The notes below the pieces were generated by a model. It had not been told where the DNA came from. It saw nothing but the letters and a program-made list of their open reading frames with translations, and did not search any database. From the NCBI GenBank assembly GCA_976226885.1, contig OZ320314.1:35588001-35652000 (forward strand): DNA of 64,000 bases, read 5' to 3'. The position numbers and the translations under genes are program-made. Positions within the stretch are counted from its first letter, which is position 1, and each line of letters begins with the position of its first letter. Source of the stretch: Iphione sp. A-MEVVRFRX5 (Eukaryota). Shown here piece by piece: positions 20,901-39,839 of this stretch.

Positions 20901-21132
20901 TACTGCATATAAAGACTGGGAAATGAATGGAAATGAAGATAATGGATAAGCATAAGCTTACTATCAGAGAGAAACAAATTCTCTCGAGGATAGTTCATGA
21001 AAAACAATTGAAACGTGGTTAAATAAAATGTAACATATTAATCGGATGATAATAACATCCTAGAATGTATAATACGCGTGTAAATATTATACACTATAAC
21101 CTTCATTCAAGGGGTCCCGCTTCTGCTCCGCA

Positions 21133-21555
21133 ATGCATGCGTATAGTTACGAGAAAGCCATGCAGAATAAGCAGGAGCGACTGGGCGCAAATATTAAGAA
21201 GTGTACTAGCGCCACAAAGGCAGAACGGTTAAGTGAGAAGATTGTTGAAACAAAACTTTGGAGAAATTCCTGTGTTGATGTGATGCGGCTGATATTAATT
21301 GCCAAATTTCAGCAGGACACAAGGGCCCTGAATGAACTACTAGCGACCGGTGACCATACCCTGATTGTCTCTTCATCTGACGACTTCTGGGGTACAGGCA
21401 TATCACCTTCATCCCCGCATTCAGAAGAGGACGGGCTAACAGCTACCGGTTTGAATCAATACGGCAAACTCCTGACGTGCCTGCGACGAGACCTGTCGTG
21501 GGGGAATCCAGCAAAGACGAGGAGAGCAGCCAGACCTGAGGGCATCGACTTCTAG
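21133..21555 (+). CDS. NADAR (YbiA-like) domain protein, N-terminally incomplete
   Basis: The frame is open from 21100 and reads FKGSRFCSAMHAYSYEKA...W...VMRLILIAKFQQD...LLATGDHTLIVSSSDDFWGTG...GLNQYGKLLTCLR. This matches the NADAR pattern F.G..F.S.EH.Y...KA / W....M......KF.Q / LL.TG / D..WG.G / G.N.LG..L. The N-terminal LSNF motif is missing. Confidence 0.85.
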   Translation: MHAYSYEKAMQNKQERLGANIKKCTSATKAERLSEKIVETKLWRNSCVDVMRLILIAKFQQDTRALNELLATGDHTLIVSSSDDFWGTGISPSSPHSEEDGLTATGLNQYGKLLTCLRRDLSWGNPAKTRRAARPEGIDF

Positions 21556-21611
21556 GCTACGGGCGCAGTGGTAGTACCTACGCTGACTGTGATAGCCGGG
21601 CACACCGCCAA

Positions 21612-22301
21612 ATGGCCAACGCAGGTGATGGGATGACAGACATTATCATAGTTGCCAGCAGTCATGGTGGGACAATTCTTAATGATCTTTTGTCGCTGCA
21701 CTGTTTTAGAGTGACAACTGCGGTTTATCCAGGTAAGGGTATCGAATACTTAGTCAAGAAATCCATTGATCACTGTAAATCTGGCAGATATAGGTACCTG
21801 ATAATCATTCCTGGAGCCAATGACATCACCAGAATATACCATTTCAAAAGAGGGTCACGTCATAAGAGTTATGTTTGCCCTAAATTTGACACATGGGATG
21901 AGGGAGTCAGCGCTCTGAGGGAGTTGTATGAACGTCAGAGCCTTTTGCTACGTGAAGGCCTAGCACATGCTGGTACTTTAGTTACATTCAGCACTGTCTT
22001 TGGTATGTCGTACTCTGATTATAACAAACATAGGTGCCATTTCACTGCCAATACGATTAGCAGTTTTGTGTTACAAGATATTATTAACCACTGTGTTATG
22101 GCCTTGAATGACATTATTCGCAATATTAATCAACTAAACTGTAGACCGACCTTGTACCTAGCTAGCCTAGTCCATACGTGGGATAAACAGCAAGTCAAAC
22201 ATAAGTATAATCGCCTACTGGATGGGTGTCACTTAAAGCCTCACTATAGCCTCAAAATGGCAGTACTGATCCGTGATTTTGTTGAGAAATTCTGTTGGTA
22301 A
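21612..22301 (+). CDS. SGNH/GDSL-type esterase (LINE ORF1-type), 229 aa
   Basis: Block I IIIVASSH, block II YPGKG, block III IIPGAND and block V LLDGCHL occur in order with typical spacing. Esterase ORF1s are known in CR1/L2 LINEs. Confidence 0.85.
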   Translation: MANAGDGMTDIIIVASSHGGTILNDLLSLHCFRVTTAVYPGKGIEYLVKKSIDHCKSGRYRYLIIIPGANDITRIYHFKRGSRHKSYVCPKFDTWDEGVSALRELYERQSLLLREGLAHAGTLVTFSTVFGMSYSDYNKHRCHFTANTISSFVLQDIINHCVMALNDIIRNINQLNCRPTLYLASLVHTWDKQQVKHKYNRLLDGCHLKPHYSLKMAVLIRDFVEKFCW

Positions 22302-22440
22302 CTGGTCGTGCCTATACGGTGTCACAGGGGTCAAATTAAGATTAGTCATTGTTCCTAGTCGTTAAGTTATTGCGTTGTGTTTATGCTTGATGACTAGATT
22401 TGCCAGCCACAAGCTCACCTATCCCCCCTAAGCAAGCTGA

Positions 22441-23165
22441 TGATCGGCCCGATAATCGGCTGAGGATGATAGGCTTGCCGCTGTCAGACCGGTTATGGAC
22501 CGATAACCAGTATCATCTATGTAACTGATCTTCCCTGTTTAACAGTTTCTTTTATATTTAAAAATTATGAAGGCACTCTTAAATAAAGAGAAGAAATGAA
22601 AAATGTGCTTTCTTTCATTGTTTCATATTATCGGCTGATCATCAGCAAAGGATGATTGGCTTGCCATCATTAGACCGATTAAGGACCGACAATTAGTATT
22701 ATTACATGACTGATATTTCTAGTTTATCAGTTTTTTTTATGTCAGAAAATTATGAAGGCACCCTTAAATAAAGAGCAGAAATGAAAAATGAGTTTTCTTT
22801 CATTTTTCCCTACGATCGGCTGACTATCGGCTAGGGATGATTGGTTTGCCATCATCAGACCGATTAAGGACCGACAATTAGTATCATTACATGACTACTA
22901 TTTCTAATTTATCAGTTTTTTTATGTCAGAAAATTATGAGGGCACCCTTAAATAAAGAGTAGAAATGAATAATTTATTTTTATTGTTTCTTATGATCTGC
23001 TGAACATTGCCAGGGGATGATTGGCTTGCCGTTATCAGACCAATTTGGGACCGACAATCACTATCATTATACATCCTTGATCAAACTTCCCTGTATATTG
23101 GTTTCTTTTATTTTGGAAAATTATGAAGGCACCCTTGAAAAAAAGTGTAGAAATGAATAATCTTT
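22441..23165. repeat. Four tandem ~185-bp subterminal units
   Basis: The anchor AATTATGA.GGCAC occurs at 22563, 22748, 22932 and 23119. Confidence 0.9.
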
Positions 23166-23356
23166 TTTTCAGTAGCTGAATGGTATTAAAACAGGGTGGG
23201 TGTAGAACTGTAATCAATACTTACACTTTACATTTTCATATACACTTTATACTACATTGTCATAGCAACATATATTTTATATCTGCAAAATGCTGAAAGC
23301 CTACTCTATTCAAATATGGCCCTGGTTTGGCTTTATCTATAGTTTAAATGCTTGTA

Positions 23357-24210
23357 AACTATGTGTCTGTATCATAAATAGCCTGGCCACAACAAATAAA
23401 AATGTATCACATCACAAAAACTGCAAATCACCTCACATGATTGACAAGAACTTAAAAAATTACTGGTGAACACATGAAGATTGTGAGAGAAATATGTATT
23501 CAATTTACACATATGATGTGTAAACTATGTGACTGTATCATGAAAAGCCTAGCCATGACGAATGAAAATGTATCACTGCAAATCTGAAAACCTCAAATCA
23601 GCTGTACATGACTGAGAGTAACTTAAAAAGTTACTAGTGAACACATGAAAATTCTGAGAGAAATATTTATCCGATTTACATATATGAGCTATCATATGAA
23701 AGGGAATTTTCAGGGCTTTCTGAATATGTAAACCATATGTCTGTATCATAAAAAGCCTAGCCGTGACGAATGAAAATGTATCATGTCAGGAAAACCACAA
23801 ATCGGCCATACACTATCAACAGTAACCCTAAAAATTACTCATGAACACATTAAGATTCTGAAAGAAATAATTGTGTGATTTACACATATGAGCTATCATA
23901 TGAAAGGAAATTTCAAGGGCTTTCCGAATGTGTAAACCATATGTCTGTATCATGAACAGCCTAGCTGTGACGAATGAAAACGTATCATGTCGGGAAAACC
24001 TCAAATAGGCCATACACAATCAACAGTAACTTCAAAAATACTCATAAACACATTAAGATTCTGAGAGAAATAATTGTGTGATTTACACATATGAGCTATC
24101 ATGTGAAAGGGAATTTCAAGGGCTTTCAGAATATGTAACCTATGTGTCTGTATCGTAAATAGCCTGGCCGCAACAAACAAAAACGTATCTTGTCGGAAAA
24201 ACCGCTTTCT
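23357..24210. repeat. About 4.5 tandem units of 165-209 bp
   Basis: The anchor AAC..(A/G)TGTCTGTATC.T.AA.AGCCT.GC recurs near 23357, 23522, 23731, 23935 and 24137. Confidence 0.85.
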
Positions 24211-24306
24211 CTCTAAACTAGTCGAGCTGGGGTTATATCTAGGTCATCTATAGCTTCACATCGCCGTTTTGGCGGGAAAAGTAGCGTGGGTAGCTGTCAC
24301 AGACAC

Positions 24307-24317
24307 AAAATGGCGGC
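24307..24317 (+). promoter_or_regulatory. YY1-like motif AAAATGGCGGC, putative internal promoter/5' exon of the DNA transposon gene
   Basis: Exact motif in a CpG-containing patch, followed by the donor-like ATT|GTAAGT at 24443. Confidence 0.3.
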
Positions 24318-24469
24318 GAACAAAATGTAAACAATGCGTCATGACTGTTTTTTCACCTGAATCACTGACTAGGAGAGCTCAGGAAGGCGCTGATGGAAGT
24401 GTACAACAAGAACTGTGTGTGCTGCAGACGTGGGATGCAATTGTAAGTTAATTAATTGTGATTTTCGCC

Positions 24470-25020
24470 TATCTCCCTCTCTCTCTACACCTCTCTCTCT
24501 TCCTGTATCTGTCTCTCTGTCAATCTCTCCAACTCTCCCTCTCACTCCCTGTTTTTCTCTCTCCATTTTCTCATGCCTCTTTCTCTCTATCTCTCTCTCT
24601 CTCTCTCCCTCTCTGTCTCCCTCTCTCTCCCTTCATTTTTCTGCCTCCTCCTCCCTCTCTCTTTTCCTCTCTTTCCATCTCCCTTGAGATCTCTCCTCAT
24701 TTCCATCTCCTCTATCTTCCTTTCTCTCCCTCTCTTCTATCTCTCTCCCTGCCTTTCTCCTTCTTTCTGCATATCTCTCTTCCTCTATCTCTCTCTCCCT
24801 CAATCTCTCTACCTCTCCATCTCCCTGCCTGTTTTTCTCTCTTCATTTTCTCATGCCTTTCTCTCTCTCTCTTTCTCTCTGTCTCTCTCTCCCTTCACCT
24901 CTGTTCCCCTTTCCCTCCCTTCCTGTACCTCCCCATCTCTCTCTTCATTTCTCCACCTCTCGCTCCTGTCCTTCCATTGCTCTCTCCTCTCATTCCCCTT
25001 TCTCCCTCTCCTCTATCTCA
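24470..25020. repeat. CT-rich low-complexity tract
   Basis: Degenerate (CT)n with an internal duplicated TTTTTCTCTCT.CATTTTCTCATGCCT segment. It explains the overlapping spurious ORFs at 24369-25123. Confidence 0.95.
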
Positions 25021-25268
25021 CAATCACCTGATTCACCATCACAGCTTAATAAGAGCATTAAATCTGATAACTAACCACTCACCTATAAAAATGCTTGGAA
25101 AACGTAATCACTTCTATGATTAATACATGAGCAATGGTACATATTAGGGTGTAAGGTACCTTAATTATCAAACCGGTATCTGAAAACAAATCTTTAGTCA
25201 CAAGTTTCCATTTTTACAACTTTAATCATTGAAATTGATGATTGTTTGTTATCTTTGTCTCAATTTAG

Positions 25269-25480
25269 GAGCTATGAAGATGAACCCCACAACAAACAAA
25301 GATACATGCAGAGAACTACAATTTGTGGTAGAAGACTATTTGAGGAATGCAGGAGACAGAGGAGGTGGCAGAAAGGAGTGGATGATTAGTACAGAGGCCA
25401 GGAAAAGTAACAGTGAAAAAAGGGAGCAAAGAACTCTAGAATGTGGCTCACCAGAAATGAGTGACATAGAATCAGAGTAA
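25269..25480 (+). pseudogene. Residual 3' exon of a BEN-like (DUF4806-type) transposon protein
   Basis: Acceptor TTGTCTCAATTTAG|G, then AMKMNPTTNKDTCRELQFVVEDYLRNAGDRGGGRKEW. This resembles the C-terminal E....I..WLR.A.DR.GGRK motif as I recall it for that family. Confidence 0.45.
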
Positions 25481-26379
25481 ATTGAGTAATCCTTTCTTTT
25501 TATTAGTGTGGAGAAGACATGCTACTAGTGTTTATTTGTTTTCGTATCTAAAATTCTGTATTTTGATAATTGTGCATATTTAATCTTTGATATTAAAATA
25601 ACATTTTAAAAACATACATTGTTTTGTCATGAATTGCTGGAATACTTTCTTTTCTAACAGTATTTATTAATTACTGCTCGATTGCATATATATTCAACAA
25701 GCAGTCATTTTATTACTACAGAACCCTTATGAAGAACATATTGACTGCAGAAAGTGACCTTTTGCAGAAGCAATTTTGGTATGATATTGAGGAGTATCAG
25801 CTTCTAGTATTAGATTGATTTAGCTCACAAAGTAGGGCCTGTTCTTTTGAAAATAATTTGTGGATTAATTAGTTAATTCTAAGTGCAAGATACAAGCCCT
25901 TTTTATATATGGAATCTTGGCCAATATCGGTAGATGATATAAAGCCGATGTTGGACCGACAAGTAGACAGCCATTATTGGACCATTCTCGGTCCACCAGA
26001 CTATTTTTTAGCAGTAACAGTAAACCAATTCAAGAGTATTCTAGAAAGGTAATTCATTGATATCATCATTAAACATATCTCAGTATCAAAGCCGATATCG
26101 GCAGCCGAGGATGGACCGGTGTATTTTGAGGGTGCAAAAAGATGTCGGGGTACAAACGGGTGCCGATGCTGGCCCGATGTCCTTGCCGATGTTGGTCCGA
26201 CAATTGACCGAAGGAGGCTTGCTTACAGGGTCTCTGATAGAGTCACATACATGACTGATCATGATGAGCCATTTAAGTTTTTTCTTTTTAAATTTTCATT
26301 GCTTATTTCGTTCTTTAAATCACGTTTATCTAAATGATTCGATTGATCACACACTTGTGCTGTTTAGCACGCATACACC

Positions 26380-29250
26380 ATGTTCGCATCCGTATCATTG
26401 CTCTCTCATTCCTGTGCATCTAGGATGCCTAGATTCATTCATCTCCTTATGGTAAAAATAGGCTACATCAACACAAGGAGTCTGGCCAAGCACTTAGATG
26501 ATATTAAGCTCATTTTGTTAAACCAGAAACTTAATTTGTTATTTATATCTGAAACTTGGTTGACACCCAACATTCCTGATTCTGCTATCGAAATTGACGG
26601 TTACATGATGCTTAGACAGGATAGGATATGTGAGGTCAGGAAGGGAGGAGGGGGTCTGGTTGTGTATTACACTGAGAACTTGCAAAGTAACCTATTACAT
26701 CTAACTGAGAATTGTATCTCTACAGCCGACTATGAACAAGTTTGCCTGTCTCTATCAGCCCAAGGGAGAAAGTGTATCTTAATTGGTGCTTATCGACCCC
26801 CCCGTGGTATAGTTGACTTAGGACTAAACTATATAAGAGAAACACTTGACTCTCCTAACCGACGCAGACTACTGCCGTTCGTGCTTTTTGGTGATCTGAA
26901 CATTGATCTTTTGAAACCAAGGAGCAGCGAGAAGCAGAAACTGGAAAATTTAATGATCGATCTGGGGAGTAAGCAGCTGATAAACGATCCCACCCGGGTG
27001 ACCATTGCGACTAGTAGCATAATTGACTTAATCATTACTAACAACAACGACATGATAACAGGATGTGCCACGGTCCTGGCTCCCTTTTCTGACCACATGC
27101 TGATAAAGAGTGATTTAAGACTAAAAAATTATACGCCTACTGTACGGGATGTGCATATAAGGAAGAAATCTGGGTGGGATGAAGAGTCCTTTATCACCGA
27201 GGCTGTAAACGGGGTCAGGAAAGTCCTTTGCTCCGATTATGCCCTAGAGCGGAAATGGAGTATTGTTCATTACATGTTGGTTAGTTTGTATGATAAGTAC
27301 AACCCACTGAAAACAATTAGGGTTAAGGGGAGGCCCAATCCCTGGATTACTGTTCACATCTTAGAACTAATCAGACTGAGAAATAATCTTTACAAGAAGG
27401 CCATTACAGTGGGTGATCTAGCTTCTTGGATTAGATTTAAGCAGGTAAGATCGGCGGTCTGTAAAGAAGTCAGATTAGCAAAACGCGAATATATCCTAAG
27501 ACAGGCCGAAAATAATAGAGTCGACAGTAGGAGATTCTGGAAGCATCTAAAGGACAACTTAGGACTTAATCGGCCAAAGAGTATGGACATCATATTGAAA
27601 CATGCAGACACAACTCTTGGAGGCCAGGATGTTCCCGAAATAATTAATAAGTTCTTTCTTGGTATAGGCAGATCAATCAATGCCAATATGCCCGATGAGA
27701 ATGTCACTACGTCTGGTACCTCCATGGTAACCGTTAACACTATGCCTGACATTGTAACAACGCACACTGAATTATGGGACATAGTTAAAAAACTTGATAC
27801 CAATAAATCTTCGCAAATTGGTGATGTACCCACTACTAGTATAAAAACTATCTTAGGGCGGGGGATCCAAGACTGGGTGGGATACATGAATGACAGCTTT
27901 CGCAATGCCCACTTCCCAGCTATGTGGAAAATTGCTAATGTCGTTCCTCTATGGAAGGGGGGTTCAAGACAAGAAGTTGGGAACTACCGTCCAATAAGTC
28001 TCCTAAATGTAATGTCTAAAGTGGTGGAAAGGATAGTCTTTAAGCAAACTATGCAGCATTTGCTGAAAAACGAGTTGTTGTGTGCTGAGCAATATGGTTT
28101 CAGGCCGGGGCGGTCAACTGAGGGGGCGATTAATAATGTGCTCAACTACATTCACAAAGCCCTAAATAGAGGGGAGAAAGTTGCAGGTCTTTTTGTTGAT
28201 TACAAAAAGGCCTTCGACTGTGTTGATCACGATATTCTGCTGATGAAGCTAAGGAGGTATGGGATAGAAGGTGTTAATTTGCAATGGTTTAAGAACTATC
28301 TAACAGATAGGTATCAGCATGTTACTTGCAATGGGATGACATCCAAAGATGGTAGAATAACATGCGGCATGCCCCAAGGCTCTATCTTGGGGCCGTTACT
28401 ATTTCTCTTATTCATCAATGACCTGCCTCGTCACATCCGTTCAGGAGTGTGTGTATTGTACGCAGATGACGTGGCAATTTTAGTAACATCCTCCACCAAA
28501 GAGGGATTATGGCATAAACTCATGTCTGCAGGGAAAGAGCTTGACCTGTGGTCGAGGACATCTAAGATCAGGGTGAATGTCGACAAGACCAAAGGTGTTG
28601 TTTTCTCCTACTCAGTTAAAGCCAAAGGTTTCTGGCCAAAGAGCATTGATTGGGGGGGAGGGGAAGTGGAAATAACTGACGCGGTTAAATACCTAGGAAT
28701 TTTTATTGATGAGAGGTTAACAATGACCAAAACCCATGTTTACACATGTCAAAAGCTAATGGCGAGATATATGTATTTTAGGATGATCAGGAAATATCTC
28801 AACCAGGAAACAGCAATAAAAATAGCCAGGGCTACCATATTACCTGTAAGTGAGTATGCGATGATAGTAAATACTAACACAGTAGCTAGGAGTTTTCAAC
28901 GACTAATGAGAATCCGGAAGAACATAGTTAACACGGCCTTTGGTTACCGCAAGTTTACAATGGCAGAAATCAAAGACGATTTCATATCGATCAGGGATAG
29001 AAGACTACTGATATTAGGGTACAGCCTAACTACCGTCAGGGAGACCAATCGAAGGACTAGAAGAAGTAGCATTCGTAGTATCCTGACTGATAGGCCCAGA
29101 CGCGAAGGATACCGTAGATCTCCTGAAAATGTCTATGGCAAATTATGGTCAGAAATTCCCACCTCTGTCGCGTCTCTACCGTATAAACAGTTTTGTTTGC
29201 AGTTAAGGAAACTAGGCAGAAAGTATAGACTCTCTTATAAGATAGATTGA
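26380..29250 (+). CDS. LINE ORF2: AP-like endonuclease + reverse transcriptase, intact, 956 aa (alternative start M at 26449)
   Basis: EN motifs YINTRSL, ISETWL, YRPP, GDLNID, IIDLI, FSDH. RT motifs NYRPISLL, QYGFRPGRST, FVDYKKAFDCVDH, GMPQGSILGPLLF, YADD, KYLG. No stops or frameshifts. Confidence 0.97.
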   Translation: MFASVSLLSHSCASRMPRFIHLLMVKIGYINTRSLAKHLDDIKLILLNQKLNLLFISETWLTPNIPDSAIEIDGYMMLRQDRICEVRKGGGGLVVYYTENLQSNLLHLTENCISTADYEQVCLSLSAQGRKCILIGAYRPPRGIVDLGLNYIRETLDSPNRRRLLPFVLFGDLNIDLLKPRSSEKQKLENLMIDLGSKQLINDPTRVTIATSSIIDLIITNNNDMITGCATVLAPFSDHMLIKSDLRLKNYTPTVRDVHIRKKSGWDEESFITEAVNGVRKVLCSDYALERKWSIVHYMLVSLYDKYNPLKTIRVKGRPNPWITVHILELIRLRNNLYKKAITVGDLASWIRFKQVRSAVCKEVRLAKREYILRQAENNRVDSRRFWKHLKDNLGLNRPKSMDIILKHADTTLGGQDVPEIINKFFLGIGRSINANMPDENVTTSGTSMVTVNTMPDIVTTHTELWDIVKKLDTNKSSQIGDVPTTSIKTILGRGIQDWVGYMNDSFRNAHFPAMWKIANVVPLWKGGSRQEVGNYRPISLLNVMSKVVERIVFKQTMQHLLKNELLCAEQYGFRPGRSTEGAINNVLNYIHKALNRGEKVAGLFVDYKKAFDCVDHDILLMKLRRYGIEGVNLQWFKNYLTDRYQHVTCNGMTSKDGRITCGMPQGSILGPLLFLLFINDLPRHIRSGVCVLYADDVAILVTSSTKEGLWHKLMSAGKELDLWSRTSKIRVNVDKTKGVVFSYSVKAKGFWPKSIDWGGGEVEITDAVKYLGIFIDERLTMTKTHVYTCQKLMARYMYFRMIRKYLNQETAIKIARATILPVSEYAMIVNTNTVARSFQRLMRIRKNIVNTAFGYRKFTMAEIKDDFISIRDRRLLILGYSLTTVRETNRRTRRSSIRSILTDRPRREGYRRSPENVYGKLWSEIPTSVASLPYKQFCLQLRKLGRKYRLSYKID

Positions 29251-29774
29251 AACTGAGTTTGATCCCCTCTCAAATAGTGGGAATTAATCTAAGTGCATGG
29301 GGCAGCAGCCGCTGCACTCACACTGTTACTTAATGGGTATAATGTTTCTGTTTGGATAGGTTTGCAGCATTGAGTGCACTGGGTTTTGGCTAATGTGTAT
29401 TACGTACAGGGACAAGTGGGGCAGTAGCCGCCTTATAACCCTAAGTTAAAGCAATTATTTTCCACTATAAACTCTCATGTAGCAAAGGGGCAACTGCGAG
29501 GCGGTTGTAAGCAGACCAACTAACAGCCAGATCTCGATTGGCAGACGTCAATGTAGACTCAGATAGACACGGTGACCAAAAGAGGGCATTAGCCGTCTTT
29601 GTGATTACCTTCTTATTTCTTAGATACTTGACGCACCCTCATTAATTGTTTAAAATCGCTGAACTTTGTACATCACCCCTCATCTCATTACATTACCTCA
29701 TTACATTGGGAGTCAAAGTTTGGATACTTGTACCTGGGCATGCATACATTTGATGTATATCGAATCCCAGAGGA

Positions 29775-29800
29775 AATAAAGATTTAAAAAAAAAAAAAAA
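29775..29800 (+). terminator. Polyadenylation signal and retroposed poly(A) tail
   Basis: AATAAA at 29775-29780 and A15 at 29786-29800. Confidence 0.85.
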
Positions 29801-38809: not shown

Positions 38810-39220
38810 AGGAAAAGTTTTAGAGGAAAAAGGGATGAATAATGCTAAAAGCTGCAAAAAAAGGGTGAAAATGACAAATGATTAAAACGGACAAATATAA
38901 TACTAAAAGCTGTGAAAAATGGTGAAAATGATGGGAAAAGGTCCAGAAAAGGATGAATATGTGCATAAATGATGCTTTAAAGTGAGGAAATGTGAAGAAA
39001 TATGAAAAAATAGCAGTGCATTGGTGTGTGGGTGTTCTCGTATCTGGAGAATTATTGAGCATGTACCAAAAATGAACAACACAAGGCAGTGCGAGGATAT
39101 GCACACAGACACCTCTTGCAGGTACGAAAACCAGGTCATTAGAAACAACATGATCAATACGAATGCATGCAGATGCAGCCTTATACACATGGACACTACT
39201 GTAGGTATGGAAACTAGGCT
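38810..39220. mobile_element. Partial PIF/Harbinger-like MITE (inverted relative of 2779-3412); left boundary approximate
   Basis: Right end GTATGGAAACTAGGC. The interior is the reverse complement of about 2900-3290. Confidence 0.6.
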
Positions 39221-39223
39221 TAT

Positions 39224-39839
39224 GGGCTGGTTTCCTTACCTGTGTGCACATGCATTTGCCTTCCATGTGTGTTTCCATGCATTTTACGTGTGGTTTCCTA
39301 TCATGCAGCCTCATGGATATGGGTGTCTTTTGACTCCGCATGAAGGCTGGAAGAAAAGTATGAAAAAGTATGAACATGATGCTAAAATCCACAACAATTG
39401 GAAAAATGAGGGGACAAGTGATGAAAAGGGACAATGATGATGCTAAAAAATGCAAAAAATGGCGAAAATGAGGGGAAAATTGATGAAAAAGGACTAAGTT
39501 GATGCTAAAAGCCATGGAAATCAGCAAAATTGAGGGGAAAATGATGAAAATTGACATGCTATGTGTGGCTATGTGCAGAAATGTGTTGAAATGTCCTGTA
39601 ATGTCCTGTACTATCCTCATTGCCTCCTTCAAAGGATATCTTCACTATACTTTTGTGCCTAGGTGTCCATATGCAATAAATTATTCGGCAAACCTCAAAC
39701 GGACCTCAATGGACCTCAATGCACAGAGACGTGCATGACACCTGTCATTTAAAGTCTATAGTTAAATAAAAATGCACACAAATACACCCAAAGTGCACCA
39801 AAAATGCACGAACACCAACACAGGTATGGAAACCGGCCC
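39224..39839. mobile_element. PIF/Harbinger-like MITE
   Basis: GGGCTGGTTTCCTTACCTG vs reverse complement of right end GGGCCGGTTTCCATACCTG (17/19). Flanks TAT and TTA. Same TIR family as 4507-5523. Confidence 0.8.

What the first reader, a model, noticed from the sequence alone, without database searches (positions are those of the whole stretch)
21103..29800. LINE retrotransposon apparently carrying a NADAR domain: NADAR - SGNH esterase - EN/RT
Seen: three same-strand ORFs (NADAR-like 21133-21555, SGNH esterase 21612-22301, intact EN-RT 26380-29250) ending in AATAAA + A15. The 4-kb gap shrinks to about 270 bp when the TIR/TSD-bounded insert (22424-26230) is removed. Established: CR1/L2-group ORF1s are modular (RRM, PHD, zinc knuckle, esterase). 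NADAR enzymes include the E. coli YbiA N-glycosidase and the DarT1 antitoxins that remove ADP-ribose from guanine in ssDNA. Some animals have guanine DNA ADP-ribosyltransferases (pierisins, clam CARP-1). I do not know of NADAR being described as a LINE ORF1 module, but I cannot check the literature here. Inference: this is a LINE family that captured a NADAR domain, possibly to erase or bind host ADP-ribose marks on its RNA or cDNA intermediates. That would be a transposon counter-defence analogous to viral macrodomains.
Basis: partly seen in the sequence, partly recalled or inferred. Interest (0 to 1): 0.9.

Follow-up and report, generated by a model that had tools for sequence, protein, structure and literature searches.

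The report
Dead three-gene LINE with NADAR domain
This is a broken copy of a jumping gene (LINE) whose RNA-binding protein ends in a NADAR domain and which also carries a separate esterase gene; the design is real, old and abundant, but this lineage's NADAR has lost both catalytic glutamates yet is the most conserved part of the element.

Summary
Window 21109-29800 is one LINE copy. It is 5'-truncated inside ORF1 and split by a 3.8-kb DNA-transposon insertion at 22424-26230.

Intact relatives in the same genome encode three products:
- ORF1: coiled coil, L1-like RRM, disordered linker and a C-terminal NADAR domain.
- A free-standing SGNH esterase.
- An APE-RT ORF2.

They end in a conserved 3' hairpin, AATAAA and poly(A).

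This is not a one-off capture. The genome gave 4416 first-look NADAR candidates. All 150 that were scored pass the Pfam cut-off, and most lie in 500-700-aa frames. The ORF1 plan also gives 1559 public 50%-identity clusters at E<=1e-30, including abalone proteins.

A 2025 paper already notes NADAR in oyster LINE ORF1s, and this scan has reported the same design elsewhere in this genome.

New here: all seven copies of the window's lineage replace both catalytic glutamates (E43 to M, E125 to V/I). Despite that, NADAR has the lowest dN of any part of the element (0.06), with synonymous sites saturated. I read it as an indispensable module that probably no longer hydrolyses, which disfavours the "eraser" idea for this lineage.

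RT clade and biochemical function remain untested.

The parts
21109..21555 (+). 3' remnant of ORF1, holding roughly the C-terminal three quarters of the NADAR domain plus the ORF1 stop. The coiled coil, RRM and linker were lost by 5' truncation.
   Evidence: Pfam NADAR at E 6e-20, profile positions 42-162 of 163. Other copies align from 21109 onwards. Alignment to intact 509-567-aa ORF1s.
21612..22301 (+). Free-standing SGNH/GDSL esterase ORF of 229 aa, intact.
   Evidence: AF2 model with mean pLDDT 88. Foldseek matches to GDSL esterases at E 1e-8 and VIA Z 17. Invariant S17, G19, G41, D204, G205 and H207.
22302..22423 (+). Inter-ORF spacer, left part.
   Evidence: Lies between the esterase stop and the left boundary of the insert.
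22424..26230 (.). Nested insertion of an internally deleted DNA transposon. Terminal inverted repeats at 22424-22437 and 26217-26230, TC on both flanks, and a CT-rich simple repeat at about 24450-25100. It is not part of the LINE.
   Evidence: At least 30 other copies share exactly these ends. Inverted repeat I7. In some copies the two ends lie 11-15 kb apart. GC skew of -0.83.
26231..26448 (+). Inter-ORF spacer, right part. It contains an upstream in-frame ATG at 26380.
26449..29250 (+). ORF2 with an open frame: APE endonuclease at about 26473-27096 and reverse transcriptase at about 27976-28701, with a YADD motif.
   Evidence: Pfam Exo_endo_phos, Exo_endo_phos_2 and RVT_1. Collinear with intact ORF2s from 26449.
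29251..29800 (+). 3' UTR with a conserved terminal hairpin (29734-29770), AATAAA (29776-29781) and A15 (29786-29800).
   Evidence: Sequence. The last ~80 nt are 81-86% identical among copies that are otherwise 65-73% identical. Alignment and consensus fold give 11 pairs, 1 of them compensatory.

Best explanation
Window 21109-29800 is a dead copy of a three-gene LINE. It lost its 5' end, and later a DNA transposon inserted between the esterase gene and ORF2.

A full-length element of this lineage is about 6 kb and makes three products:
- An L1-like ORF1 protein with a long coiled coil (presumably a trimer), an RRM, an ~80-aa disordered linker and a C-terminal NADAR domain.
- A separate SGNH esterase with an intact Ser/Asp/His triad.
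- An endonuclease-reverse transcriptase. This presumably recognises the conserved 3' hairpin and copies the RNA at a nicked target.

Shown: the architecture, its conservation, and very strong purifying selection on NADAR.

Inferred: in most sister lineages the NADAR keeps its catalytic residues and is probably an active N-glycosidase or ADP-ribosyl-base hydrolase travelling with the LINE particle. In the window's lineage both distal-ribose glutamates are replaced by hydrophobic residues. There the domain most likely no longer hydrolyses ADP-ribosyl bases. It would be retained for an essential non-catalytic role, such as ligand or nucleic-acid binding or particle assembly. That role may stand in for the missing L1-type C-terminal domain.
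For: Linkage and collinearity:
- At least 7 copies in the genome carry NADAR plus esterase over query positions 7-1201.
- Intact three-ORF copies are L021, L022 and L024; L026 is nearly intact.
- blastn shows the window is collinear with them and has a 3.8-kb extra segment.

ORF1 fold (L021 model):
- Helix 50-152, RRM 155-253, disordered 259-337, NADAR 338-492.
- Foldseek matches 8bau NADAR at 1.6e-7, YbiA at 2.7e-7 and the human L1 ORF1p trimer at 2.9e-5.

Esterase.

Selection: synonymous sites are saturated. dN rises in this order:
- NADAR 0.061
- RRM 0.153
- Coiled coil 0.237
- Esterase 0.11-0.21
- ORF2 0.27-0.37
- Linker 0.61

Catalytic residues:
- phmmer alignments to 8bau and 2b3w and MAFFT alignment with 29 other LINE NADARs plus a host-like NADAR agree.
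- The window lineage has E43 to M and E125 to V/I in 7 of 7 copies, while K50, W89, D130 and W133 are kept.
- The other LINE NADARs keep E43 in 29 of 29 and E125 in 24 of 29.
- The nearest outgroups show related losses: L016 has E125 to A; L018 has E43 to S, K50 to A and E125 to V.
- Mutating the equivalents of E125 and E43 abolishes in-vivo function of E. coli C7 NADAR, and D171A/N loses activity in vitro (PMC11543638).

NADAR tree: the window lineage has a long stem (4.85) and a short crown.
Against: - No biochemistry was done, and catalytic loss is inferred from alignment only.
- E88A (the E43 equivalent) had only a minor effect in vitro in E. coli C7 NADAR. The Met substitution alone is therefore not proof of inactivity.
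- An invariant acidic loop (SEED) and the SSSDD motif could supply substitute catalytic residues or a new substrate specificity.
- The AF2 model rests on a shallow 22-sequence alignment, and I could not inspect the pocket.
- The role proposed for the domain (binding or assembly) has no direct evidence.
- No expression data are available: no sequencing run was listed.
Confidence: 0.6

Rival explanations
1. The NADAR of this lineage is still an enzyme. It would have a rebuilt active site or a different substrate, using other acidic residues, and would remove a host-made modification from LINE RNA or cDNA.
For: - Purifying selection on the domain is extreme.
- K50, W89, D130 and W133 are retained.
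- Invariant acidic motifs lie near the pocket.
- Sister LINE lineages keep a canonical active site.
- NADAR domains in RNA-virus polyproteins are proposed to remove host ADP-ribosyl adducts (PMC9503650).
- E88A in E. coli C7 NADAR is only mildly impaired in vitro.
Against: - Both ribose-contacting glutamates are replaced by hydrophobic residues in all 7 copies.
- Related outgroups lose different subsets of these residues, including K50. That pattern looks like relaxed need for catalysis, not a redesigned site.
- No DarT-like transferase was detected in the genome, although that search's control did not ring.
Confidence: 0.25
2. The NADAR segment is a decaying relic, or belongs to a neighbouring unrelated element or host gene. 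On this reading its adjacency to the esterase and RT in the window is accidental.
For: - In the window the NADAR ORF is truncated and begins at an internal Met.
- The 5' flank is unrelated sequence.
Against: - The same order and spacing recur in at least 7 diverged copies, with one continuous ORF1.
- NADAR has the lowest dN of the whole element.
- The layout recurs in other lineages and in other assemblies.
Confidence: 0.02
3. The copies with intact ORFs are not active transposons. They would be domesticated host genes derived from a LINE, which would explain single-copy subfamilies with strong constraint.
For: - Each subfamily of this lineage is present as one or a few copies.
- No copy is more than 73% identical to the window's copy.
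- Several copies nevertheless keep all ORFs open.
Against: - All copies end in the same 3' hairpin, AATAAA and poly(A).
- The window copy is 5'-truncated like a typical LINE insertion.
- Several copies are degraded (L019, L020, L023, L025, L027).
- Copies are dispersed across chromosomes.
- Many low-copy, deeply diverged LINE lineages are usual in invertebrate genomes (my own knowledge).
Confidence: 0.08

Closest known systems
NADAR-bearing ORF1 proteins of Crassostrea gigas LINEs filed as Tx1 in Repbase, mentioned in PMC12477816 (Genome Biol 2025)
   Same: A YbiA-family NADAR domain sits inside the ORF1 protein of an invertebrate (lophotrochozoan) LINE. The paper suggests a role in processing the RNA intermediate.
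   Different: - That paper gives one sentence, with no architecture, no esterase ORF, no selection analysis and no active-site analysis.
- I could not obtain the Repbase sequences, so direct relatedness and the Tx1 label are untested.
- The window's ORF2 (933 aa, with a PF14529 match and only 59 bits to human L1 ORF2p) does not look L1/Tx1-like.
Esterase-type (type IV) ORF1 proteins of CR1, L2 and RTEX LINEs and Penelope-like elements, e.g. zebrafish ZfL2-1 (PMC3905857; PDB 4c1b)
   Same: - It is an SGNH esterase encoded upstream of EN-RT with a conserved catalytic triad.
- The His directly after the nucleophile Ser, said to be transposon-specific, is present here (SSHG / DSHG).
   Different: - Here the esterase is its own small ORF with no coiled coil, and it lies downstream of a separate L1-like ORF1.
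- Sequence similarity to 4c1b is only marginal (E 0.36).
Human/mammalian L1 ORF1p (type II ORF1: coiled coil, RRM, CTD; PDB 2yko)
   Same: Coiled coil followed by an RRM. Foldseek E 2.9e-5 to the L1 ORF1p trimer.
   Different: - No L1-type C-terminal domain. A disordered linker and a NADAR domain follow the RRM instead.
- Pfam Transposase_22 does not hit.
NADAR hydrolases: DarG1 antitoxins, Phytophthora NADAR (8bau) and E. coli YbiA (2b3w)
   Same: - Same fold, with TM 0.67-0.77 normalised to the target.
- Pfam hit above the cut-off.
- K50, W89, D130 and W133 equivalents are kept.
   Different: - E43 and E125 equivalents are replaced by Met and Val/Ile.
- The domain is fused to an RNA-binding protein of a retrotransposon.
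- No partner transferase is known.
Macro and NADAR domains embedded in polyproteins of animal positive-strand RNA viruses (PMC9503650)
   Same: An ADP-ribose-processing fold carried by a selfish RNA-based replicator of invertebrates, including bivalve and annelid picornaviruses.
   Different: - Those domains are proposed to be active erasers of host ADP-ribosylation.
- The window's lineage lacks the catalytic glutamates.
- No host ADP-ribosylation defence against LINEs has been shown.
Nematode SNA-3, a three-NADAR nuclear protein of the SL1 trans-splicing machinery (PMC9303266)
   Same: An animal NADAR protein acting in an RNP context. One of its NADAR domains also lacks the conserved catalytic residues.
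   Different: It is a host gene with tandem NADARs, not a transposon protein. No sequence relationship was tested.

Membership tests
APE-type non-LTR retrotransposon (LINE) | APE endonuclease and reverse transcriptase in one ORF | tested here: met
   PF03372 and PF14529 at residues 32-242, and PF00078 at residues 533-774 with E 4.6e-37. YADD motif present.
APE-type non-LTR retrotransposon (LINE) | Dispersed copies with variable 5' truncation and a common 3' end | tested here: met
   Copies lie on at least 8 contigs. The window copy starts inside ORF1. All copies share the 3' hairpin, AATAAA and poly(A).
APE-type non-LTR retrotransposon (LINE) | Target-site duplication flanking the insertion | tested here: inconclusive
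   Only a possible 4-nt ATTC. No repeat of 8 nt or more, even with one mismatch allowed.
NADAR superfamily (PF08719) | Profile match above the curated cut-off, and the NADAR fold | tested here: met
   72.5 bits in the window and 77-80 bits in intact copies, against a cut-off of 35.1. Foldseek to 8bau and 2b3w with probability 1.00.
NADAR superfamily (PF08719) | Catalytic glutamates (Phytophthora NADAR E43 and E125; YbiA-family signature) | tested here: not met
   E43 is Met and E125 is Val/Ile in 7 of 7 copies of the lineage. It is a member by fold and sequence but not a canonical enzyme.
NADAR superfamily (PF08719) | N-glycosidase or ADP-ribosyl-base hydrolase activity | not testable with these tools
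   Needs biochemistry.
SGNH/GDSL hydrolase | SGNH fold | tested here: met
   Model with mean pLDDT 88. Foldseek E 1e-8 and 120 hits at E<=1e-3, all listed ones GDSL/SGNH. VIA Z 17.4, rmsd 3.6 over 185 residues.
SGNH/GDSL hydrolase | Block I Ser, block II Gly, block III Asn, block V Asp-x-x-His | tested here: met
   S17, G41, D204 and H207 are invariant in 16 sequences. GAND is present in the window lineage, while the block III Asn varies in other lineages.
SGNH/GDSL hydrolase | Sequence-profile membership (Pfam Lipase_GDSL families) | tested here: not met
   No Pfam hit at E<=1. The profile search against PDB is only marginal. Assignment rests on fold and motifs.
L1-like (type II) ORF1p | Coiled coil plus RRM plus L1-type C-terminal domain | tested here: inconclusive
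   Coiled coil and RRM are present in intact relatives. There is no CTD, and a linker plus NADAR takes its place. Transposase_22 does not hit. All of this region is missing from the window copy.
CR1 group or Tx1 clade (RT-based LINE clades) | Placement of the RT in a phylogeny with clade reference sequences | not tested
   No Repbase or Dfam references were available. Indirect hints only: the PF14529 match, a 933-aa ORF2, no C-terminal Cys motif, and weak similarity to L1 ORF2p. A poly(A) tail is unusual for the CR1 group (PMC13343379).

The most novel reading that the evidence does not exclude
NADAR-ORF1 LINEs could be a lophotrochozoan-wide answer to a host defence that ADP-ribosylates nucleic-acid bases. 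The window's clade would then have turned the eraser into a catalytically dead but indispensable 'reader' or decoy. That module would bind the modified nucleic acid or the host transferase instead of hydrolysing the mark.
Probability: 0.15. Interest if true: 0.8.

Novelty: new variant of a known kind. Interest (0 to 1): 0.58.

Why it matters
LINE ORF1 proteins are known to be modular, but an ADP-ribose-related enzyme fold is not among the described module types. The only mention I found is one sentence in a 2025 paper.

This genome shows that NADAR-ORF1, with a separate esterase gene, is a major, ancient and diverse LINE design, not a curiosity. It also offers a natural experiment:
- Many lineages keep a canonical NADAR active site.
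- One clade has lost it yet conserves the domain more strictly than its reverse transcriptase.

Comparing the two kinds biochemically would make the question "what does NADAR do for a retrotransposon?" directly testable. It could also reveal whether invertebrates use base ADP-ribosylation against retroelements.

Tried and rejected
Searches that gave nothing:
- The search for homologous proteins with the full ORF1 of L021, and with its NADAR region only, returned nothing. This probably reflects database composition and says nothing about rarity.
- A metagenome-contig scan with the ORF1 alignment returned nothing.
- No sequencing run was listed, so there is no expression test.
- The DarT family (PF14487) gave no match in the own genome, but the control rang nowhere, so this is uninformative.
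- Literature searches for YbiA with non-LTR, and for DUF1768 with transposable element, gave 0 papers.

Searches that did not settle the question:
- The best RT relatives, P0001 and P0002, have no NADAR or esterase upstream. RT similarity at 35% identity therefore does not predict the ORF1 type.
- RT clade could not be resolved. The ORF2 search, the Atlas and the PDB gave no clade-informative names.

Limits reached:
The 45-55%-identity intermediate NADAR lineages could only be sampled through L016 and L018.

Readings considered and rejected:
- That NADAR belongs to a neighbouring element.
- That it is a decaying relic.
- That the 140-aa ORF is a separate cistron.

The halves were searched separately.


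Full report
**Observation**

- 21133-21555 matches Pfam NADAR at E 6.4e-20, 72.5 bits against a cut-off of 35.1. It covers only profile positions 42-162 of 163.
- 21612-22301 has no Pfam hit.
- 26380-29250 carries an APE endonuclease and RVT_1.
- The 3' end reads AATAAA (29776-29781), GATTT, then A15 (29786-29800).

**The window copy is truncated and interrupted**

A DNA search of the window's own 1.18-Gb genome with 21103-22420 found at least 7 other loci. They cover query positions 7-1201 at 69-73% identity. I fetched 10 kb around eleven loci.

Three loci (L021, L022, L024) have three intact same-strand ORFs; L026 has the same layout, but its ORF2 is split into two frames of 511 and 431 aa:
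- ORF1 of 525-567 aa, counted stop to stop.
- An ORF of 226-255 aa.
- An ORF2 of 934-951 aa.

blastn shows the window is collinear with them:
- 21109-22302 aligns to the ORF1 end plus the esterase.
- 26449-28949 aligns to ORF2.
- 29720-29800 aligns to the 3' tail.

Three conclusions follow.
- The window copy is 5'-truncated at about 21109, inside the NADAR-coding part of ORF1.
- The ATG at 21133 is an internal Met codon, not a start.
- The esterase-to-ORF2 gap is 4147 nt in the window, against about 370 nt in intact copies.

The extra DNA is a dispersed repeat. At least 30 other copies begin exactly at 22424 and end at 26230/26231, at 74-94% identity. It has 14-nt terminal inverted repeats and TC on both flanks. 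In some copies the two ends lie 11-15 kb apart. The window's 3.8 kb is therefore an internally deleted DNA transposon.

I found no convincing target-site duplication for the LINE itself.

**Anatomy of the element, from intact natural relatives**

ORF1 of L021 was modelled with a 22-sequence alignment:
- A helix at residues 50-152.
- A beta-alpha-beta RRM-like domain at 155-253.
- A disordered stretch at 259-337.
- A compact domain at 338-492.

Foldseek matched this model to Phytophthora NADAR 8bau (1.6e-7), E. coli YbiA 2b3w (2.7e-7), the human L1 ORF1p trimer 2yko (2.9e-5) and many RRMs. Pfam NADAR hits residues 371-505 of the stop-to-stop frame.

The middle ORF was modelled from the window's own sequence with 16 diverged homologues. 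Mean pLDDT is 88. It is an SGNH/GDSL hydrolase by Foldseek (E 1e-8; 120 hits at E<=1e-3) and by VIA (Z 17.4). The nucleophile Ser (SSHG / DSHG), the block II Gly and the Asp-Gly-x-His of block V are invariant. The His after the Ser is the position that Schneider et al. describe as transposon-specific (PMC3905857).

All copies share a 3' hairpin (window 29734-29770), AAATAAAGATTT and poly(A). One compensatory change supports the outer pair of the hairpin; the other pairs barely vary.

**How large the group is**

Searching the own genome with PF08719 gave 4416 first-look candidates. All 150 that were scored pass the cut-off at 93-176 bits, and most lie in open frames of 500-700 aa.

- One of them (L030, 176 bits) looks like an ordinary host NADAR gene.
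- In the 29 other loci fetched, most have an esterase-like frame and/or the N-terminus of an endonuclease downstream of NADAR. The esterase matches at 20-30% amino-acid identity.

The three-gene plan is therefore shared by very diverged lineages.

A profile of 22 ORF1s was searched against 1.84 billion representative proteins.
- It found 1559 clusters at E<=1e-30.
- Most of the best 150 match in a single stretch that runs from the coiled coil or RRM through NADAR, and many of them are 400-700 aa long.

Named members come from the abalone Haliotis rufescens. The ESM Atlas lists NADAR-only clusters of 415-489 aa, with Annelida the commonest taxon.

Three loci from two other public assemblies show NADAR-ORF1 followed by a 956-1021-aa EN-RT. 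One has a recognisable esterase in between, one a partial esterase, and one none.

The window's own lineage is small. About 12 copies have 64% or more NADAR amino-acid identity. No copy is more than 73% identical in DNA to the window's copy.

**Selection and active site**

Among L021, L022, L024 and L026, synonymous sites are saturated: dS is above 1 or undefined. Mean dN by region:

| Region | dN |
|---|---|
| NADAR | 0.061 |
| RRM | 0.153 |
| Coiled coil | 0.237 |
| Esterase | 0.11-0.21 |
| ORF2 | 0.27-0.37 |
| Linker | 0.61 |

NADAR is the most constrained part of the element.

The alignments to 8bau and 2b3w use the residue numbering of Schuller et al. (PMC11543638). They show that the two glutamates contacting the distal ribose are gone:
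- E43 is Met (SAMHAY).
- E125 is Val/Ile (LIVSSSDDFWG).
- K50, W89, D130 and W133 remain.

This holds in all 7 copies, including the more distant L028 and L029.

By contrast, 29 other LINE NADARs of this genome keep E43 (29 of 29) and mostly keep E125 (24 of 29). About 85% of 170 NADAR domains in the public top hits are canonical at both positions.

The nearest outgroups that I hold show other losses:
- L016 has E125 to Ala.
- L018 has E43 to Ser, K50 to Ala and E125 to Val.

In the NADAR tree the window lineage sits on a very long stem (4.85) with a short crown. This is what a functional shift followed by tight constraint would produce.

In E. coli C7 NADAR, D171A/N (the E125 position) loses activity. 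E88Q is dead and E88A is mildly affected in vitro. All of these fail to rescue cells from DarT1 toxicity.

**Mechanism**

Shown:
- This is a tricistronic LINE.
- ORF1p is L1-like with a tethered NADAR.
- The esterase triad is intact.
- ORF2 is intact even in the dead window copy.
- A 3' hairpin is conserved.

Inferred:
- ORF1p trimerises and coats the RNA.
- The esterase may act at membranes, as proposed for ZfL2-1 (PMC3905857).
- ORF2p recognises the hairpin.

For NADAR, I think the canonical lineages carry an active N-glycosidase. The window's clade retains the fold for a non-catalytic, essential task (confidence about 0.6). A rebuilt active site or a new substrate remains possible (about 0.25).

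**Comparison with what is known**

- PMC12477816 reports NADAR in Ectocarpus Gypsy Pol. In one sentence it also reports NADAR in the ORF1 of several oyster LINE families filed as Tx1 in Repbase.
- Reviews of ORF1 modularity (PMC4120745, PMC13343379) do not mention NADAR or a separate esterase cistron.
- Earlier notes of this scan describe the same three-gene design at eight or more other places in this genome. Some also note lost NADAR residues. The present window is therefore a repeat sighting on other DNA, not a first.

**Limits**

- The RT clade is unresolved.
- The organism was not identified.
- There are no expression data.
- The active-site inference rests on alignments.

Noticed in passing
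window 22424-26230: A DNA-transposon family with 14-nt terminal inverted repeats (CCCCCTAAGCAAGC...) and TC on both flanks. At least 30 copies exist in the genome. Some have their two ends 11-15 kb apart, so a large autonomous form probably exists. Superfamily not determined.
   Followed up: partly
window 24450-25100: A strongly strand-biased CT-rich simple repeat inside the insert (GC skew -0.83). It creates several spurious Leu/Ser/Pro-rich ORFs.
   Followed up: no
window 29720-29800 and many genomic sites: More than 30 short matches cover only the last 55-120 nt of the LINE (hairpin plus AATAAA plus poly(A)), at 78-91% identity. These may be extreme 5' truncations or SINEs that borrow this tail.
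   Followed up: no
L030 (G000:C22:27636416-27636865, minus strand): The best NADAR match in the genome (176 bits), with fully canonical catalytic residues and no ORF1-like coiled coil or RRM. It is probably the ordinary host NADAR gene.
   Followed up: partly
P0121/P0275-P0277 and P0123/P0278 (Haliotis rufescens XP_048255699 and others): Annotated abalone 'uncharacterized proteins' of 680-4850 aa contain up to 7 stretches matching the NADAR-ORF1 profile. They are likely TE arrays merged into gene models.
   Followed up: no
P0122, P0129, P0192: Public proteins with 3-5 tandem NADAR domains whose catalytic positions are mostly degenerate. This is a different architecture from the LINE ORF1.
   Followed up: no
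L035, L037: A LINE lineage whose NADAR has Leu at the E125 position and Glu at the D130 position. It may be the sister of the window's lineage in the NADAR tree, but support is weak (68/15).
   Followed up: partly
L025:1-2169 and L027:2-2460: LTR-retrotransposon-like Pol and Gag frames lie next to degraded copies of the LINE, i.e. nested TE insertions.
   Followed up: no
window 38820-39632 (minus strand): A 270-aa ORF with no Pfam match. Not examined further.
   Followed up: partly
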